IMG/VR virus record: IMGVR_UViG_3300024239_000014
Span: 124,001-188,000 of that record
Length of the DNA stretch: 64,000 nt
Direction: 5' to 3' (one strand)
This document shows, piece after piece, positions 27,104-52,014 of the stretch. The translations under genes were made by a program, and so were the position numbers. The notes under the pieces were generated by a model, which saw only the letters and a list, made by a program, of their open reading frames with translations, was not told the DNA's origin and searched no databases. Numbering within the stretch: the stretch's first letter is position 1; each line of letters opens with the position of its first letter.

Positions 27104-27850
27104 TTACCTCGTTTTACGTAGATCTGGCGAATGAATGACATTAAGACCCAATTCTTTTGCACGGGACTGTAACGTCAATACGTGTTTGTCGCACAACGCG
27201 TTTACCGCGTGTGCGTCAGAATTGATGATCACCTTAGCACCGGCTTTAGCAACCATTTCCCAAAAGAAGGGTCTGGGGTAATTAACCCCTTTGCGTAAAC
27301 CGTGTGCGTTGAGCTCAAGCGGTAGGTCTAACGCTATTGCTTCGTTGATGATTCGCTCTGACAGCAAAATGGCTTGCGCTGTCTTTTCCTTGATCCACAG
27401 ATCGGGGTGGGCCAAGAAGTCAAAGTAACCAGTACGCATGGCCACGAGCAAGTCGTCTACGTACTGAACGTGGTGCTCTTCTTTAGCATTCGGAACGTAC
27501 AATTGCCGCCCGTTCACTTTCGCACAATGCTGACCGAGTACCAGGTAATCAATCCGCGTATCATTGCTGAGCAGATCGTAGTACCAGTCATGCTCTGGGA
27601 CGTACTCAAGTTCAAGACCTGCGTACAGACTGATTCGATCTTGGTACTTTTCTTTGGCTTGATAAAATGATTCCAGGTATTCACGCAACTGATTGCGTTT
27701 CAACCGATGGTATTCGTTGTCAATCAAAGGACCGTGCTCAGAAAACCCAAGTGCCGTATAGCCGTGCTTAATGGCTTCCTCGATGTAATCCTCGAAGTCA
27801 CCGGTTGCATGGCTGCAACGATACGTGTGGGTGTGCCAATTGGTTTTCAC
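27104..27850 (-). CDS. PHP-family phosphoesterase (histidinol-phosphatase HisJ-like, 248 aa)
   Basis: NWHTHT..C.HA, GFSEHGP, GLELEY, GQH, LAHPD, LELNA, INSDAH. Start reassigned to the GTG at 27850 (RBS AAGGA). Confidence 0.85.
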   Translation of the reverse strand: MKTNWHTHTYRCSHATGDFEDYIEEAIKHGYTALGFSEHGPLIDNEYHRLKRNQLREYLESFYQAKEKYQDRISLYAGLELEYVPEHDWYYDLLSNDTRIDYLVLGQHCAKVNGRQLYVPNAKEEHHVQYVDDLLVAMRTGYFDFLAHPDLWIKEKTAQAILLSERIINEAIALDLPLELNAHGLRKGVNYPRPFFWEMVAKAGAKVIINSDAHAVNALCDKHVLTLQSRAKELGLNVIHSPDLRKTR

Positions 27851-27875
27851 AAACAAGGTCCTTAAGTGAAATAGA

Positions 27876-27912
27876 ACGGGTGGGAGGAATCCTCCCACCC
27901 CGTATGCCGTTA
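27876..27912 (-). terminator. Motif-led hairpin after thyA
   Basis: TAACGGCATAC then a GGGTGGGAGG/CCTCCCACCC stem. Confidence 0.7.
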
Positions 27913-28209
27913 CACGCTGATCGGAAACTCGATCTTGCCTTGGTGGTTGTAATCGATCAACTCGATGTCCTCCCACTTGATGTCAAAGATCGACGTACCG
28001 ACCGGCACCTTGAGTCTCAAGCGCGGTCCTTCGGTCGGAGTGCGTGACAGCTGTTCTTCCACACCAGCAAACTGGTTGCTGTAGATGTGGACATCGCCGC
28101 CCGTCCAGATAAACTCACCAGGCGCATAACCGAGCTGGTTAGCGATCATGATGGTCAAAAGAGCATAGCTGGCGATGTTGAACGGCACACCGATTGGAAA
28201 ATCTGCACT
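27910..28209 (-). CDS. thyA: Thymidylate synthase exon 2
   Basis: SADFPIGVPFNIASY...GDVHIY; joins exon 1 in frame to give LYQR^SAD (spliced product 306 aa). Confidence 0.92.
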   Translation of the reverse strand, partial: SADFPIGVPFNIASYALLTIMIANQLGYAPGEFIWTGGDVHIYSNQFAGVEEQLSRTPTEGPRLRLKVPVGTSIFDIKWEDIELIDYNHQGKIEFPISV

Positions 28210-29310
28210 CAGATCTGTTCCTACGACTCGTGACGTCGCAGCGCACCATTACGTGCTGCCGGTATCACTACCGGTGTCGGTATACATCACAGTCTCCGTC
28301 CTTAGAGACTCTCTCCTGTTTCGGTTCCACTTAGAACCTACTCTACTCGCTTCTCGCTGTTAGTCCTGCGAGGCTTTCGATATACTCTGGGCATTAAGCG
28401 TAAGTCCAGTCTTTAAACCTTTCGCTTTTAGAAGCAATTCTGAAGACCACAGTTGCCGGACAAACGTCAAACTGCCGTGCTGCTTCAGTTACAGAATCGT
28501 AAACACATCCGTCGATTACGACTTTGCGTAGGTTAGTGGGCAAGATGCCTAATCTCTTCTCAGAAAGACGCTCTTTGGTTTCCTGACTGTGTTTTTTACC
28601 GAAGAAAGGATTTTTATCTCCTATCCGTAAAATACCCTTACGGCGGAGTTTTTCCTTCGTTTCTTCAGATAGTGATCTACCCTTACTCCAGGGTGTTCTA
28701 CCTATCCCGGCTAGTCTTAAAGCCTCGATAACGTGCTGAGGTCTTTTCTTACCGTAGTTATGGTTTAATGGACCACTCCTACCGTAGACTTTTCGCCGTT
28801 CTTCTTCGGTTAATGTTTTTGCGAAATCAAGTAGCCTATTTTTAGCTAATTCCTTGATCTCAGCACAGTCGGGATGGTTTGAGTAGGTATCGCCACCACT
28901 CGCACCATCTAGGATGTTGTACACGCTTTTGTTAGCTAGGCCTTCTTTAATGAGTTCTAGCTCGCGTGCTCTAGCATCCTCTTCGGTGGAAAATTGTGCT
29001 ACTTGGAGGATGTTCCAATCCGCCATGTTGCCAGTCCAATCATCCAGCATCTTTCTATTGTGGTGGGTTCCGTTAGCCAATTCCCTAAAATGTCTTTTTA
29101 TCCTTAGGGAAAAGTTTCCAGTACTACCGTAATAGGCTTTCTTCGTCCGCACGTTGTAAAGACAGTATACTTTATATTGCATGTAAACCTCTATTAAAAG
29201 GTAGTCCATACAATAAGTCGCTCTTAGCAACGGATAGCGTCTTTTCGACATTTCCCGTTTTAAGGAGAGTTATTCGACTAGGGTCACCCCTAGAAGGCGC
29301 AGTGTGGTTT
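28210..29310 (-). mobile_element. Group I intron (IA2-like), 1101 nt, in thyA
   Basis: U before the 5' splice site and terminal G. IGS CACUGCGC (29297-29304) pairs with junction GCGU|AGUG. P2 CUAGGG-GUGA-CCCUAG, P3 CUCUCCU/AGGAGAG, P4 AACGGG/UCCGUU, P7 GAGUAUA/UAUACC with bulged A, P7.2 GGUUC/GAACC, P8 AGUCUC/GAGACU, P9 hairpins. Confidence 0.92.
28394..29182 (-). CDS. Intron-encoded GIY-YIG homing endonuclease (262 aa)
   Basis: KVY..YYGST..F..R...H...L, E..LI, YNI; NUMOD3-type HNYGKK, FFGKKHSQETKERLS repeats; C-terminal HTH IDGCVYDSVTEAARQF; RBS GAGG; located in the P6 loop. Confidence 0.9.
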   Translation of the reverse strand: MQYKVYCLYNVRTKKAYYGSTGNFSLRIKRHFRELANGTHHNRKMLDDWTGNMADWNILQVAQFSTEEDARARELELIKEGLANKSVYNILDGASGGDTYSNHPDCAEIKELAKNRLLDFAKTLTEEERRKVYGRSGPLNHNYGKKRPQHVIEALRLAGIGRTPWSKGRSLSEETKEKLRRKGILRIGDKNPFFGKKHSQETKERLSEKRLGILPTNLRKVVIDGCVYDSVTEAARQFDVCPATVVFRIASKSERFKDWTYA

Positions 29311-29931
29311 ACGCTGATACAATTGGCAACTCAATCTCAGCGTCGGAATACCAGCCTCGTCCAACTCCTGCACGGTCGGCATGAAGTCTTCGTCTTTGTA
29401 CAGACGCCACTCCACCACCCGCTCTTCGTGGGTCATTTCTTCCACGATGAACTGGAACAGACAGTGGCACGGAGCCAGTGCCATATTGCCGTTGGCGACG
29501 TTCAGATGGGGAAGAATTGATTCGTCCGGCAGTTCAGCTGGATTCCAGGCAGTTACAACGTGCCGCCGCGAAAATGGTTTTTGATTCAGCTGGGTCAGCA
29601 GTTCCGTAATCTGGTCTACCCCGTTGAAATCGCGCCACTGGGCGCCGTAGATAGGACCAAGACGCCCTTCGGCATCTGCCCAGTCGTCCCAGATGTGGAC
29701 ACCCTTGGCGACTAATTCGTTGTTGTTAGTGCTACCGCGGAGGAACCAAAACAGTTCTTCTGCCAGGCCGCGGAGGAAAACCAGCTTCGTGGTCAGGAGC
29801 GGGAACCGTTGAGCAGACAGGTCAAAGCGCATCTGAGCACCGAAGACTGAACGAGTGCCGGTACCAGTACGGTCTTTCTTGTCGCGACCGGCGGTGTAGA
29901 TGTGGCGCATGAGTTCGAGGTATTGTTTCAT
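29311..29931 (-). CDS. thyA: Thymidylate synthase exon 1
   Basis: [40 protein letters not shown] (catalytic Cys), LYQR. Confidence 0.95.
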
Positions 29932-48489: not shown

Positions 48490-51400
48490 TTACACTTCCC
48501 AGGACAAACTGGAACCAACTGTTCCCGTAGCGCCGTTCACATCATCGCTCACCTGTAGGCCGGTTCCCTCTTCGAGTTTAAATCGATGCACCAGCGTAGC
48601 GCCTTCGTAATACTGAGCGCTGTACAGCGTACCGACACAACCAGAATTACCAACACCGGAGTGCATCAACAGGTTCACTTGGAGTGCCAGTCCCGTACCA
48701 TCGTACCGGCCAGCTTCTACACCATCAACCCGCACGACAATGCTGGTACCGCCGATACATTCCAGCTCGATCACTGACCGATTGGCAGTAGACAGCAGAT
48801 GTGCACCAGCAGGGCGAATCATGACAAGAGACGGCATACCTGGCATGCGTAGACCGATAGAACCGTCCTGATAGAACGCCAATACTTTGCTGGCATCGGT
48901 GCCTGTGACAAAATACCCGCACACGCCAAGCGTAGTCGCCAACGTAGACGGTTTTGCTACAAACACCCACCGTTGTGTGTTACCGGTAACCATGAGGTTG
49001 TTCAACTTGACAGCTAGTGAACTATCGTTACCGCCAGCTCGACGCAACAGACCTTTGGTATCGAGCAACATGTCCCAGGCCGGAGCTACATAGGTCCCAT
49101 CCAAGTGGATCGTAGCAACCAGCTGATTGTCGTCGTTGTAGATGAAGATGTACTTCACCTCAAAGTTGGCGACGGATTGCCAGTAATGCAAGCGCAGTCG
49201 GTTCGCTGACCAGAACTTCGGCAACAAGATAACCTGACGTTCACTCAAAGCTGGATTGGGACCAGATGCAAGCACGGCGTGAGCAAAAGAACCGCGCTGA
49301 ATCAGGATATCCGTTAGCGAAAGATCGATATTGCTTGGCTCGTAACTCCCTGCGGCGATCTGTGCTGGTGAAAAGTTGGTCGTATCAAAGTAATCCTGAT
49401 ACGAAACCCAGTTAATCCGGTTTTCCGAATCACCATCAATCACCATCAGGTTATCTTCAGCTGTCTCCAGATAACGACCACCGTCGTGTCGGTTCATGTG
49501 GGTGATGATGCGGCCATTGGTTGCATTGATATCACCCGAATCCAACATCACGCCGTAGTAACACCAACCATAGTTCACATGCGGGTGGACAATGGTGGAG
49601 TTAGTGGTCAGCCCAGTGGCATCCCACGTTAACATGGCGTTGGTGTGTTCACGGAAGCTGCGAAGGTAGCTTTCGTTGAACGTGTTGTTATCGAGTTTTA
49701 CCAAACCGCTCAGGAACCGGATGGACTTGATTTGCCAGTTCAACGGCACGCCGTCGTAATCCATCTTGTACAACTGGAACGCAGCGATCTTTTCATTGGG
49801 TCCCAGTGGTGGGTTGAGTTCATAACTCAGGATTCTACCTGCGTCTCGATCACCAGACCATGCCGATGGATCAAGTAAACGACTGGCCAGCACACGCACG
49901 CCGTCTTTAACTTCGACGCGGCGCGCACCACCCTCAGCCACATACAGCGGACCAGCTTGCTGTCCGTCCTGCAAGATGGTATTGAGTGCTGTGTTATACA
50001 GGTAGTCTTCACCAAAACCCAGTGACGCTACTTCAGTCGGACCCGTCCCGAAGTTATAAGCCCCGTTGGTTTCGACGATGATTTCATAGCCGTTGGCCAA
50101 GAGGTTGGCTCGCCAGGACAATGTTTCATCGCCGCCGGAAATCACCGTCGGTTGACGGTAGTTCACCAACTTCCCATACTGACTCAGCAGCTGATTATGC
50201 TTGTTGAAGACATAGACGTACTGCGGCCGCCCAGGTAACAGATCGCCGTTGGTATAACGACCGGTCATTTTCTTATTGGCTTCACTCCACTCCACTGGTG
50301 GACAGAGTGCCAGCGAACCACAACGGTCATAAACCGGCTTGTCACCGATCTCAACACGACACGGTGAATTTTCGCCAATGGCGACATACACGTCCCCGTT
50401 CAGGATCTGGGTGAGGCTATTCCCTTCGGTCCACTTGCCAAAAGCAACTTCGTTAAACAATGGTGCGGTAGCTTCGTTATTCAACACCGGCCCGACCATC
50501 GCCCGCTTTACATTACCGCGCGCAGAAACAATGTTGAGTTCCATTGTCCCAGCGTCCCAAGCGGCCGGGTTATGTTTAGCCCAGCAGCGGAAGAAGTTCC
50601 AGCTGTCCCAGTCCCAAGTCGATTCAGCATCGATCCCTACACTACCCCATGCATCTAGGGCATGGGAGTTACCACCGTAGTCCCAAACCTTCGATACCAA
50701 GGTCGGCATGATCAAGTCGGCCGGTTCACCGCCACCGTCGTCGACGTTAGCCCAGAACATCTTGAGCTGGCTGCGACCATTGATGACACCAGGAATCGGT
50801 GTACTGTTAGTCCAGTGTTGATTGGCCGCGCCGAGTGCCTTGCCTGGCGGAACACGCAAAGATGATGCACAAAAGAGTTCACCGAAACGAGGCGTGTGGC
50901 GTACGCTACGACGTACGATGCGACCACCATCTTCATGGTTGTAGTAGTACACCGCGGGGCGACCGTTCATCCCACCTGGCGCATACTTGCCATTATCAAA
51001 ATGACCATAGTCCCATGAGCCTAGTTCGGCCAAGGTCTGTGCCTGGTCACCAATCGTGGCGGTCGTGTAATCGTTGTATGCTTGGCGTTCTGGCATACCG
51101 CCGACAAATGCCAAGGTGGGGCTTTCGACAGTAAACAGAGACCCTTGGGTAAAATTACCCGTCACGATCAGGTCGGGACCAGGATCACCGAGCGGGAATT
51201 CACTGTCAAGCCGTCCTACAAGAGTCGGGATGAGTTGAAAGGTAAACGGCAAGAGTTCGGTATTACCAGACCCTTCAACCACTTCCAGCGTAGCGTATTG
51301 GGTAACACTACCGCCGCGCCCATCGGAGATGACGTATGTTAATCCCAGCGTACCTGTAGTGGTAGCACTGACAGTCCATGGACCGGTACCTGCAAGTGTA

Positions 51401-52014
51401 CCGTTGCCGGACGTGGTTTGAACAAATGAAACCGACAACGCGTCACCATCCGGATCCGTTGTCCCTTGCAGGAGCATCTCAGGCGTTAGGACGACACTGC
51501 CACCCTTCTCCAATTGACCAAGGTTAACCACACCTGTTGTTTGCGGCACCCGGTTTGGTACAGCGGTAGTTGAATTCAAAAAGATGACCGCAGACCCTGT
51601 CCAAACAATACTCTTAGGCTTGGCTTGCAGCGTGATGCCAACTACCGCATCAATCGCCGGCAGCGGTGCATCATAAACGTCGTTAACGGTCAACCCGAGA
51701 CCATAGCGCGCATTGAGCAAAGGGATCAGGTCATGAGTGCGGAGAGCTGCACCTTTAGGCAGCGGGAAACTGATGTTGCGTAACACCGTGCCAAGATTGA
51801 CACGATTGTAATAAATCGGCTTAAAGCCGCGGACTCTTTCACCTTCGCCCACAGTCACAACGGCACGGGTATTTTTACCCGATGAATGATTGGTGACGGT
51901 CTTTAACAAAGTTAAACGAATATCAGAAGGCAACACGGAAGCAGGAAGGCCCTGGTTCTGTGCGCGTAGTTGCGTCATGATGTTTTCCATCACCGACGTG
52001 TAAAAAAGCGACAT
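48490..52014 (-). CDS. Tail fibre/receptor-binding protein (1174 aa)
   Basis: N-terminal family anchor (YYNRVNL..DLIPLLNARYGLGL..DV), cadherin-like TDPDGDALSV, two related beta-rich domains, C-terminal LamG-like domain. Confidence 0.75.
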   Translation of the reverse strand: MSLFYTSVMENIMTQLRAQNQGLPASVLPSDIRLTLLKTVTNHSSGKNTRAVVTVGEGERVRGFKPIYYNRVNLGTVLRNISFPLPKGAALRTHDLIPLLNARYGLGLTVNDVYDAPLPAIDAVVGITLQAKPKSIVWTGSAVIFLNSTTAVPNRVPQTTGVVNLGQLEKGGSVVLTPEMLLQGTTDPDGDALSVSFVQTTSGNGTLAGTGPWTVSATTTGTLGLTYVISDGRGGSVTQYATLEVVEGSGNTELLPFTFQLIPTLVGRLDSEFPLGDPGPDLIVTGNFTQGSLFTVESPTLAFVGGMPERQAYNDYTTATIGDQAQTLAELGSWDYGHFDNGKYAPGGMNGRPAVYYYNHEDGGRIVRRSVRHTPRFGELFCASSLRVPPGKALGAANQHWTNSTPIPGVINGRSQLKMFWANVDDGGGEPADLIMPTLVSKVWDYGGNSHALDAWGSVGIDAESTWDWDSWNFFRCWAKHNPAAWDAGTMELNIVSARGNVKRAMVGPVLNNEATAPLFNEVAFGKWTEGNSLTQILNGDVYVAIGENSPCRVEIGDKPVYDRCGSLALCPPVEWSEANKKMTGRYTNGDLLPGRPQYVYVFNKHNQLLSQYGKLVNYRQPTVISGGDETLSWRANLLANGYEIIVETNGAYNFGTGPTEVASLGFGEDYLYNTALNTILQDGQQAGPLYVAEGGARRVEVKDGVRVLASRLLDPSAWSGDRDAGRILSYELNPPLGPNEKIAAFQLYKMDYDGVPLNWQIKSIRFLSGLVKLDNNTFNESYLRSFREHTNAMLTWDATGLTTNSTIVHPHVNYGWCYYGVMLDSGDINATNGRIITHMNRHDGGRYLETAEDNLMVIDGDSENRINWVSYQDYFDTTNFSPAQIAAGSYEPSNIDLSLTDILIQRGSFAHAVLASGPNPALSERQVILLPKFWSANRLRLHYWQSVANFEVKYIFIYNDDNQLVATIHLDGTYVAPAWDMLLDTKGLLRRAGGNDSSLAVKLNNLMVTGNTQRWVFVAKPSTLATTLGVCGYFVTGTDASKVLAFYQDGSIGLRMPGMPSLVMIRPAGAHLLSTANRSVIELECIGGTSIVVRVDGVEAGRYDGTGLALQVNLLMHSGVGNSGCVGTLYSAQYYEGATLVHRFKLEEGTGLQVSDDVNGATGTVGSSLSWEV

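What the first reader, a model, noticed from the sequence alone, without database searches (positions are those of the whole stretch)
27910..29931. thyA group IA2 intron at the phage beta22 site, carrying an intact GIY-YIG endonuclease
Seen: the intron 28210-29310 splits LYQR^SAD. An 8-nt IGS pairs both exons with the U.G wobble, and P2-P9 are traceable, including an atypical P7 (GAGUAUA/UAUACC instead of GACUA/UAGUC) with compensatory pairing. The ORF lies in the P6 loop. The site is 7 codons (21 nt) upstream of the Gly codon where the T4 td intron inserts, and that td site is empty here. Known, from memory: the Bacillus phage beta22 thy intron lies 21 bp upstream of the td site and has only a fragmentary ORF. 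Inference: a still-mobile version of that intron in a Gram-negative jumbo phage, with a new homing specificity that may matter in competition between nucleus-forming phages.
Basis: partly seen in the sequence, partly recalled or inferred. Interest (0 to 1): 0.7.

Follow-up and report, generated by a model that had tools for sequence, protein, structure and literature searches.

The report
Mobile group I intron in thyA
The thymidylate synthase gene of this uncultivated 250-kb phage is split by a genuine group I intron carrying an apparently intact homing endonuclease gene, but the same intron family sits at the same codon in many sequenced phages, so it is a well-supported yet ordinary find.

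Summary
On the minus strand, thyA exon 1 (29931-29311) and exon 2 (28209-27910) match Pfam thymidylate synthase positions 1-168 and 169-266. The 1101 nt between them (29310-28210) form a td-like (IA2-type) group I intron. Eleven homologous introns support the helices by covariation. For 33 pairs of P7-P9.2, 97% of cells pair against 35-46% when slid. P3 pairs in all 11 sequences. P10 follows the Ser codon of exon 2.

The 262-aa ORF (29182-28394) lies in the P6a loop. It keeps the I-TevI catalytic residues plus NUMOD3 and the I-TevI DNA-binding domain. The site is exactly that of the Bacillus phage beta22 intron (R|S), 21 nt upstream of the td site.

It is not new. Homologous introns occupy this site in Erwinia phages RisingSun, Joad and AH06, Pseudomonas phiKZ-like phages (OMKO1, SL2), Vibrio phage phiKT1028 and Bacillus phage Bobb.

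Extras: ORF-containing and ORF-less forms coexist in environmental DNA. The genome encodes a chimallin homologue and has three more group I introns, in two RNA polymerase genes and a DNA polymerase gene. Splicing, cleavage and any role in phage competition are untested.

The parts
29311..29931 (-). thyA exon 1 (207 codons, ends ..LSCQLYQR; last base U29311)
   Evidence: Pfam PF00303 positions 1-168, E=7e-62; sequence
28210..29310 (-). group I intron, 1101 nt, td-like (IA2-type)
   Evidence: Splice sites fixed by Pfam continuity and by 10 homologous introns. Covariation.
27910..28209 (-). thyA exon 2 (99 codons plus stop, starts SADFPIGVPFN)
   Evidence: Pfam PF00303 positions 169-266, E=9e-34
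29297..29304 (-). internal guide sequence CACUGCGC. GCGC pairs with exon 1 GCGU (P1, with U.G). CACU pairs with exon 2 AGUG (P10).
   Evidence: P1 U.G is present in 7/7 sequences. P10 changes with the Ser codon of exon 2 in the homologues.
29278..29293 (-). P2 hairpin CUAGGG-GUGA-CCCUAG. It contains the in-frame stop UAG (29292-29290) that ends translation from exon 1 after 6 intron codons.
   Evidence: GG/CC changes to UA/UA or UG/CA in Bobb and RisingSun.
29263..29269 (-). P3 5' strand CUCUCCU
   Evidence: Pairs with 28317-28311. P3 is fully paired in 11/11 homologues with 9 different sequences. It is also found unaided in the MFE fold of the ORF-less form.
29230..29258 (-). P4-P5-P4' (ACGG .. 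UGUC-GAAAA-GACG .. CCGU)
29219..29228 (-). P6 (GC) and P6a (GAGCG) 5' strands
   Evidence: G-C changes to A-U in P6 of RisingSun, UViG175 and both IMG/VR jumbo contigs.
28394..29182 (-). homing endonuclease gene, 262 codons plus stop. The SD GAGG is at 29191-29188. The last codons overlap the P6a 3' strand.
   Evidence: Pfam GIY-YIG, NUMOD3 and I-TevI_DNA-bd. Y6, Y17, R27, H31, H40, E74 and N89 are conserved. PDB 1i3j and 1mk0 match.
28397..29222 (-). 826-nt segment (ORF plus its leader) that a 14-nt hairpin replaces in natural ORF-less variants
   Evidence: Joint 28396->29223 with 14 letters between, seen in 4 wastewater and 2 subsurface runs
28391..28400 (-). P6a (CGCUU) and P6 (GC) 3' strands
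28381..28387 (-). P7 5' strand G(A)GUAUA with a bulged A. The G-C pair after the bulge is the presumed guanosine-binding pair.
   Evidence: helix 1: 100% paired, 4 of 6 pairs compensatory, G-C 10/10
28323..28372 (-). P7.1 (CUCGC..GCGAG, 28372-28353) and P7.2 (GGUUCU-AAGU-GGAACC, 28338-28323)
   Evidence: P7.2: 6 of 6 pairs compensatory. P7.1 appears only as a hairpin in this sequence and in the MFE fold.
28311..28317 (-). P3 3' strand AGGAGAG
28291..28310 (-). P8 hairpin AGUCUCU..GGAGACU
   Evidence: helix 3 (90% paired, 5 of 7 pairs compensatory)
28279..28284 (-). P7 3' strand UAUACC, preceded by the conserved J8/7 sequence GUGAU
28222..28274 (-). P9 (CCGGUA-GUGA-UACCGG), P9.1 (GCAC..GUGC), P9.2 (UGCGAC..GUCGUA)
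   Evidence: helices 4-7; coordinates
28210..28210 (-). terminal G of the intron (omega G)
27878..27900 (-). terminator-like hairpin just after the thyA stop codon
   Evidence: 10 pairs, 8 G-C, T-rich tail

Best explanation
[quoted passage not shown] It belongs to a family that occupies the same ..QR|S.. codon boundary in many phages.

Proposed splicing (inferred from anatomy):
1. thyA is transcribed as one pre-mRNA.
2. Ribosomes entering the intron stop at the UAG inside P2, after 6 codons.
3. The RNA folds into P1-P10.
4. Free guanosine bound at the invariant G-C pair of P7 attacks after U29311, which is held in a U.G wobble by the guide sequence.
5. P10 then aligns exon 2, and exon 1 attacks after G28210.
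6. The product reads CAGCGU-AGUGCA (LYQR-SAD) and encodes a 306-aa ThyA.

Proposed homing (inferred by analogy with I-TevI):
1. The 262-aa GIY-YIG endonuclease is translated from its own SD and AUG in the P6a loop.
2. Its C-terminal NUMOD3 and helix-turn-helix domain binds an intron-free thyA allele across the insertion site.
3. The tethered catalytic domain cuts some 20-30 bp upstream. A CNNNG motif (CUGAG) lies at -30 to -26.
4. The double-strand break is repaired from the intron-carrying genome, which copies the intron in.

Shown here: gene structure, splice-site geometry, conserved and covarying helices, endonuclease domain content and catalytic residues, presence/absence polymorphism of the sister intron, and ORF-plus/ORF-less polymorphism of this intron. 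Inferred: catalysis, cleavage and homing.
For: - Exon continuity: Pfam positions 1-168 and 169-266.
- Splice-site geometry: U at the 5' splice site in a U.G pair (7/7) and a terminal G.
- 3'-half helices P7, P7.2, P8, P9, P9.1 and P9.2: 33 pairs, 97% of cells paired, 28 pairs with compensatory change. Slid controls pair 35-46%. No shuffle of 500 reaches the observed values.
- 5'-half helices: 91.6% paired against 35-53% slid.
- P3 is paired in 11/11 sequences with 9 different helix sequences.
- The IGS follows the exon 2 Ser codon: CACU/AGUG, GCUGA/UCAGC, CUGA/UCAG, GCU/AGC.
- Homologues not broken by an ORF in P6 pass Rfam RF00028 (gathering score 50): beta22 84.5 bits, OMKO1 69.4 bits, IMG/VR ORF-less relative 58.5 bits.
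- The natural ORF-less form of this very intron folds unaided into P2, P3, P4, P5, P6, P6a, P7.1, P7.2, P8 and P9.1.
- Endonuclease: GIY-YIG, NUMOD3 and I-TevI DNA-binding domains. The residues matching I-TevI Y6, Y17, R27, H31, H40, E75 and N90 are all conserved. PDB matches are 1i3j (E=1.4e-12) and 1mk0.
- Signs of mobility: within Phikzvirus, 12 records carry the sister intron and many others, including phiKZ, lack it at the same site. ORF-plus and ORF-less forms of this intron coexist in the same DNA samples.
- Cultured, viable phages (RisingSun, OMKO1, Bobb) have the same arrangement.
Against: - Rfam RF00028 does not detect the window's intron at the gathering score or at E<=10. I attribute this to the 826-nt insertion in P6a, but the window sequence itself never passed a curated model.
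- P1 and P10 are only 4 bp each.
- There is no RNA evidence. The only runs labelled RNA-Seq that hold the sequence are flagged as probably DNA and show no spliced joint.
- No intron-free allele of this particular thyA was found, so no natural homing target is known.
- Endonuclease activity, cleavage position and entry into a phage nucleus are untested.
Confidence: 0.85

Rival explanations
1. Split gene without splicing. A free-standing endonuclease gene was inserted into thyA, and the two halves are made as separate polypeptides that associate, or thyA is simply dead.
For: Public annotations of relatives list two 'thymidylate synthase' CDSs and an endonuclease between them. Exon 2 has an internal GTG-started ORF. 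No spliced RNA was seen.
Against: About 290 nt of non-coding sequence flanking the ORF are conserved across phages of Erwinia, Pseudomonas, Vibrio and Bacillus and covary as a group I core. ORF-less versions of 371-392 nt still interrupt the gene and pass RF00028. The guide sequence tracks exon 2 codon usage. The break falls between adjacent Pfam positions inside the most conserved part of the enzyme.
Confidence: 0.04
2. The intron splices, but the endonuclease is no longer an active homing enzyme. It may be decaying, or retained for another role such as assisting splicing or repressing its own expression.
For: Endonuclease genes in this intron family are often lost or decayed: the beta22 remnant, the ORF-less L012, a shortened HNH ORF in L009, and ORF-less variants of this very intron in the same samples. 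No intron-free target allele was found.
Against: The ORF is full length with all catalytic residues and both DNA-binding modules. The ORF-plus contig is identical (0 mismatches) in three independent samples. It has a good SD and AUG.
Confidence: 0.15
3. The intron needs a protein or translation-coupled cofactor and does not self-splice on its own.
For: P1 and P10 are short at 4 bp each. From the literature, T4 td splicing in vivo depends on translation and RNA chaperones (PMC3984707).
Against: The core elements are complete and close relatives of the td type self-splice. This is a matter of degree rather than of kind.
Confidence: 0.1

Closest known systems
Bacillus phage beta22 thy intron (L31962; Bechhofer, Hue & Shub 1994)
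   Same: Identical insertion site (..R|S.., 21 nt upstream of the td site). Same td-like architecture. P1 pairs with a U.G wobble. Its 41-aa ORF remnant is 48% identical to the C-terminal DNA-binding domain of this endonuclease.
   Different: beta22's intron is 392 nt with only an ORF remnant, and that remnant lies in the P8 loop, not in P6a. Core identity is only about 47%. Its host phage is a Bacillus phage.
thyA introns of sequenced phages: Erwinia RisingSun/Joad and AH06, Pseudomonas OMKO1/SL2 (Phikzvirus), Vibrio phiKT1028; also Bacillus phage Bobb (160 kb, Herelleviridae)
   Same: Same site and homologous ribozyme. The 5' 49 nt are 94% identical to phiKT1028. The exon/intron junction stretch (last exon bases plus about the first 60 intron nt) is 88-91% identical to RisingSun/Joad, and the guide sequence is identical to RisingSun's. 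Most carry a GIY-YIG/NUMOD3/HTH endonuclease in P6a.
   Different: The endonucleases are only 33-36% identical to this one. OMKO1 carries its ORF in P9.1 and AH06 carries an HNH ORF. The window's P7 sequence (GUAUA/UAUAC) is unique among those seen. The ThyA protein is at most about 57% identical to any other found.
T4 td intron with I-TevI (seen here through T4-like phage TuIa), and the related I-BmoI thyA intron of Bacillus mojavensis
   Same: Same gene and same subgroup, with P7.1/P7.2 and P9.1/P9.2. The ORF is in P6a. The endonuclease has the same catalytic and DNA-binding domains.
   Different: Its insertion site is 21 nt downstream (..FLG|LPF..). I-TevI has a zinc finger in its linker, which this protein lacks. 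Core identity is about 46%. That I-BmoI shares the td site is from memory and was not checked here.
PhiPA3 gp210 intron endonuclease (Birkholz et al. 2024, PMC11620839)
   Same: An intron-encoded endonuclease in a nucleus-forming jumbo phage, and the model for intron-mediated interference between co-infecting chimalliviruses.
   Different: gp210 is an HNH nickase in an RNA polymerase gene. Here the enzyme is a GIY-YIG protein in thyA. No competition data exist for it.

Membership tests
Group I intron | 5' splice site after a U that forms a U.G wobble with an internal guide sequence (P1) | tested here: met
   U29311 pairs with the G of GCGC. The U.G pair is present in 7/7 aligned homologues.
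Group I intron | Terminal G (omega G), with exon 2 aligned by P10 | tested here: met
   G28210. P10 is CACU/AGUG, and its counterpart in the homologues changes with the exon 2 Ser codon.
Group I intron | Conserved core P3-P8, with P7 holding a G-C guanosine-binding pair next to a bulged base, and a P3/P7 pseudoknot | tested here: met
   P7 is 100% paired with an invariant G-C next to the bulge. P8 is 90% paired. P3 is paired in 11/11 sequences.
Group I intron | Match to the curated covariance model RF00028 at the gathering score | tested here: inconclusive
   The window gives no hit. The model cannot bridge an 826-nt insert in P6a. Homologues without an insert in P6 score 58.5-84.5 bits against a cut-off of 50.
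Group I intron | GTP-dependent self-splicing | not testable with these tools
   No RNA data. The runs labelled RNA-Seq are probably DNA.
Subgroup IA2 (td-like) | Extra helices P7.1 and P7.2 between P7 and P3', and P9.1 and P9.2 after P9 | tested here: met
   P7.2, P9.1 and P9.2 covary. P7.1 is a hairpin in this sequence and in the MFE fold. The subgroup definition is from memory (Michel & Westhof 1990).
I-TevI-like GIY-YIG homing endonuclease | N-terminal GIY-YIG domain with catalytic Tyr, Tyr, Arg, His, Glu and Asn | tested here: met
   PF01541, E=2.4e-9. Y6, Y17, R27, H31, H40, E74 and N89 are invariant in alignment A3.
I-TevI-like GIY-YIG homing endonuclease | C-terminal NUMOD3 and helix-turn-helix DNA-binding domain | tested here: met
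   PF07460 and PF20987. PDB 1i3j, E=1.4e-12.
I-TevI-like GIY-YIG homing endonuclease | Zinc finger in the linker (specific to I-TevI) | tested here: not met
   The Cys cluster of the I-TevI homologue has no counterpart here. The linker is instead longer and holds NUMOD3 repeats. This excludes identity with I-TevI itself, not membership of the wider family.
I-TevI-like GIY-YIG homing endonuclease | Site-specific cleavage of the intron-free allele and homing | not testable with these tools
   Indirect evidence only: intron presence/absence within Phikzvirus.
beta22-site thyA intron family | Insertion between the Arg and Ser codons of ..QR|S(A/N/V/C)D.., 21 nt upstream of the td site | tested here: met
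beta22-site thyA intron family | ORF in the same loop as in beta22 | tested here: not met
   beta22's remnant is in P8. Here the ORF is in P6a. The ORF position varies across the family (P6a, P8, P9.1).
Chimalliviridae-like (nucleus-forming) jumbo phage | Encodes a chimallin (nuclear shell) homologue and split multisubunit RNA polymerase genes | tested here: met
   A 627-aa ORF at genome 244132-245598 is 27% identical to phiKZ gp54, E=6e-28. RNAP beta-subunit PHROGs match. Formation of a nucleus was not shown.

The most novel reading that the evidence does not exclude
The endonuclease may be more than a selfish homing enzyme. In co-infections it could enter the phage nucleus and break the genomes of intron-free relatives, giving interference competition as shown for PhiPA3 gp210. 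The coexistence of ORF-plus and ORF-less forms of the same intron in one environment would then reflect an ongoing sweep, or balance, of a competitive weapon rather than neutral gain and loss.
Probability: 0.15. Interest if true: 0.6.

Novelty: new member of a known kind. Interest (0 to 1): 0.3.

Why it matters
On its own this is a correct annotation: one thyA gene, one intron and one homing endonuclease, instead of three genes.

Its wider value is as a data point in a family that turns out to be large. One ribozyme type sits at one thyA codon boundary in phages of Bacillus, Erwinia, Pseudomonas and Vibrio. Endonuclease genes of different kinds (GIY-YIG, HNH) sit in different loops (P6a, P8, P9.1), or are absent.

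ORF-plus and ORF-less forms coexist in the same samples. This fits the old idea that gene, intron and intron ORF evolve independently.

It also offers natural material for asking whether intron endonucleases act as competition factors among nucleus-forming phages, for example the intron-plus and intron-minus Phikzvirus isolates.

Tried and rejected
- Rfam on the window at the gathering score and at E<=10 gave no group I hit. I explain this by the ORF in P6a and did not take it as evidence against an intron.
- Bechhofer et al. 1994 (PMC45293) is not held. The beta22 site was instead read directly from L31962.
- Megablast found only a 49-nt match. Sensitive blastn was needed to find the relatives.
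- tblastn of the 1174-aa neighbouring ORF against phages gave no match, so the phage has no close sequenced relative outside masked records.
- A pattern scan of 185,579 prokaryote genomes for the P1-P2 motif found 0 hits. This narrow motif was seen only in phage sequences here.
- The metagenome scan with ThyA exon 1 returned only the source contig plus relatives at or below 57% identity. None carried the family's canonical motifs. No intron-free allele of this gene was found.
- The wastewater runs labelled RNA-Seq are probably DNA and show no splice joint, so there is no expression evidence.
- The first MAFFT alignment of ORF-less cores misregistered P3, P4, P5 and P7.1 in some rows. I counted those helices only where the register is unambiguous, or from anchored strands.
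- Energy evaluation of my manual structure failed because P3 and P7 form a pseudoknot.
- I considered P7 = GAGUAG (28347-28342) in the conserved GUAGAGUA block. I rejected it because that block is invariant while the 3' strand varies.
Full report
**What is there.**
The feature lies on the minus strand.
- An ORF from 29931 to 29311 encodes 207 residues ending ..LSCQLYQR.
- A second stretch from 28209 to 27910 encodes SADFPIGVPFNIASY.. (99 residues).
- Against Pfam thymidylate synthase (PF00303) the two pieces cover profile positions 1-168 and 169-266, adjacent to the residue.
- The 1101 nt between them (29310-28210) start after a U and end with a G.
- They contain a 262-codon ORF (29182-28394) with GIY-YIG, NUMOD3 and I-TevI DNA-binding domains.
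- The mechanical ORF list gives 285 aa from an ATG at 29251. That start lies inside the P4/P5 region. The homologues and a GAGG six bases upstream point to the ATG at 29182.

**Is it a group I intron?**
Rfam's Intron_gpI model does not hit the window at the gathering score or at E<=10. That could have sunk the finding, so I looked for relatives.
- Megablast found a 49-nt, 94% match of the intron's 5' end in Vibrio phage phiKT1028.
- Sensitive blastn and pattern scans added Erwinia phages RisingSun, Joad and AH06, Pseudomonas phiKZ-like phages (OMKO1, SL2 and others), Bacillus phage Bobb and three IMG/VR contigs.
- In every one, thyA is interrupted at the same ..QR|S.. boundary.
- Relatives whose core is not broken by a large ORF in P6 pass RF00028 (cut-off 50 bits): beta22 84.5 bits, OMKO1 69.4 bits and an ORF-less IMG/VR intron 58.5 bits.
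- Relatives with an ORF in P6 give only partial, sub-threshold hits or none, as the window does.
- So the Rfam miss is a property of the insert, not of the ribozyme.

**Covariation.**
On an alignment of the 3' halves of ten introns I wrote in P7, P7.2, P8, P9, P9.1 and P9.2 as read from the window.
- 97% of 301 cells form standard pairs, and 28 of 33 pairs show changes on both sides.
- Sliding the partners by 1-3 columns drops pairing to 35-46%. No shuffle of 500 reaches the observed values.
The helix is G(A)GUAUA/UAUACC here, G(A)GAGCA/UGCUCC in phiKT1028, GACCA/UGGUC in RisingSun and GACUA/UAGUC elsewhere.
- P7 has an invariant G-C pair beside the bulge, the expected guanosine-binding site.
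- The 5' halves (P1, P2, P4, P5) pair in 91.6% of cells against 35-53% slid. The splice-site U.G is present in all seven.
- P3, which spans the ORF, is perfectly paired in all 11 introns with nine different sequences.
- The guide sequence changes with the synonymous Ser codon that opens exon 2: CACU/AGUG, GCUGA/UCAGC, CUGA/UCAG, GCU/AGC. This is direct evidence for P10 and for the 3' splice site.
- The helix set, with P7.1/P7.2 and P9.1/P9.2, is that of the td (IA2) type. The td intron of T4-like phage TuIa aligns along the whole core.

**The ORF-less form.**
- Contigs from four wastewater runs and two subsurface runs join 28396 to 29223, with 14 other letters between that form a small hairpin.
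- This is the same intron with P6a capped and no ORF.
- In the two subsurface DNA runs, from the same study as the source sample, the ORF-containing form (0 mismatches) and the ORF-less form occur together.
- The ORF-less sequence folds unaided into P2, P3, P4, P5, P6, P6a, P7.1, P7.2, P8 and P9.1.
- No joint at the splice junction was seen, so there is neither spliced RNA nor an intron-free allele. The runs labelled RNA-Seq are flagged as probably DNA.

**The endonuclease.**
- Aligned with the I-TevI homologue of TuIa and the endonucleases of Bobb, RisingSun and phiKT1028, the residues matching I-TevI Y6, Y17, R27, H31, H40, E75 and N90 are all conserved.
- The PDB matches are the I-TevI DNA-binding domain (1i3j, E=1.4e-12) and the I-TevI catalytic domain (1mk0).
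- It lacks the I-TevI zinc finger and has a longer NUMOD3 linker.
- It is only 33-36% identical to the other endonucleases at this site.
- By sequence it is intact. Activity is untested.

**The sites.**
- TuIa td reads ..WYQRSVDVFLG|LPFN...
- beta22 reads ..VGVR|SNDMGLGNPFN.., with a 392-nt intron.
- The window's intron is nonetheless not a close copy of beta22's. Core identity is about 47%, no better than to td (46%), against 61-62% to phiKT1028, RisingSun and an IMG/VR contig (rough alignment).
- The beta22 ORF remnant lies in P8. Even so, it is 48% identical to the C-terminal domain of this endonuclease.
- Across the family the ORF is GIY-YIG in P6a, GIY-YIG in P9.1 (OMKO1), HNH in P6 (AH06, L009), a remnant in P8 (beta22), or absent (L012).

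**Signs of mobility.**
Within the genus Phikzvirus, 12 records carry the sister intron. Many others, including phiKZ itself, have an uninterrupted thyA at 95-99% exon identity. That is the usual signature of a homing element.

**The genome.**
- The window is bases 124001-188000 of a single 249,640-bp metagenomic contig.
The host is unknown.
- RF00028 finds three more group I introns above cut-off elsewhere in the genome. They split two RNA polymerase beta-subunit genes and a DNA polymerase gene.

**Novelty.**
- Group I introns in phage thymidylate synthase genes have been known since 1984 (T4) and 1994 (beta22).
- A GIY-YIG endonuclease in the thymidylate synthase intron of an Agatevirus is listed in a 2025 survey (PMC11878797).
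- The split thyA of Bobb was compared with beta22 in 2015 (PMC4528723).
- The jumbo-phage relatives are in GenBank as two thymidylate synthase CDSs around a homing endonuclease.
- I found no paper that treats the chimallivirus thyA introns as a family.
- The window's element is therefore a new member of a known kind.

**Verdict.**
The intron, the site, the intact-looking endonuclease and the jumbo chimallin-encoding phage hold.
- 'A still-mobile version of the beta22 intron' and 'new specificity' are overstated.
- The link to competition is speculation with one precedent (PhiPA3 gp210; PMC11620839).

Noticed in passing
own genome outside the window: G000:C1:38037-38340(-), 242299-242698(-), 216137-216393(+) (loci L015, L016, L017): Three more group I introns pass RF00028 (78.5, 69.6 and 57.1 bits). 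By length they look ORF-less. They split an RNA polymerase beta-subunit gene (phrog_3148), a second RNAP beta-type subunit gene just before an ..ADFDGDQLN motif and next to the chimallin gene (phrog_2987, exons covering positions 2-411 and 412-476), and a DNA polymerase gene (phrog_3011, 3-488 and 495-571). With thyA that makes four introns in one phage genome.
   Followed up: partly
window 28397-29222 (minus strand): In environmental DNA this 826-nt segment (endonuclease ORF plus leader) is replaced by a 14-nt hairpin. The ORF-plus and ORF-less forms of the intron coexist in two subsurface runs from the source study, and the ORF-less form also occurs in four wastewater runs.
   Followed up: yes
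L002 (IMGVR_UViG_3300036546_000175), minus strand about 1077-2000: The thyA of this contig carries the same intron and, further upstream, an intein with a LAGLIDADG endonuclease inserted just before the catalytic Cys (..VNHN|CHTLSQWY). Pfam gives LAGLIDADG_3 and Hom_end above their cut-offs and Intein_splicing below its cut-off. That is two different mobile elements in one gene.
   Followed up: partly
L005 (Pseudomonas phage OMKO1) 2521-3610: In phiKZ-like phages the sister intron has a contiguous core with the GIY-YIG ORF in the P9.1 loop. Twelve Phikzvirus records carry it, and many others, including phiKZ, KTN4 and Wadjak 2, lack it at the same site. These are ready-made intron-plus and intron-minus pairs of cultured phages.
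   Followed up: partly
L006 (Erwinia phage AH06), L009 and L012 (IMG/VR jumbo contigs): These have the same site and a homologous core, but an HNH ORF (AH06), a shortened HNH ORF (L009) or no ORF (L012, 371 nt), plus a long extension of P5.
   Followed up: partly
window 27878-27900 (minus strand): A strong terminator-like hairpin (10 pairs, 8 G-C, T-rich tail) lies directly after the thyA stop codon.
   Followed up: no
window 27107-27865 (minus strand): The downstream gene encodes a PHP-domain phosphoesterase (Pfam PF02811, E=2e-19). The 290-aa ORF in the mechanical list overlaps the end of thyA only because it is extended to an upstream GTG.
   Followed up: no
window 29290-29292 and the homologues: Every intron of the family has an in-frame stop within 7 codons of the 5' splice site. 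Here it is the UAG inside P2. Ribosomes coming from exon 1 therefore stop before the core.
   Followed up: partly
window 48490-52014 (minus strand): This 1174-aa ORF has no tblastn match at E<=1e-20 in 50,697 phage records. Only its first 150 residues hit virion-protein PHROGs.
   Followed up: no
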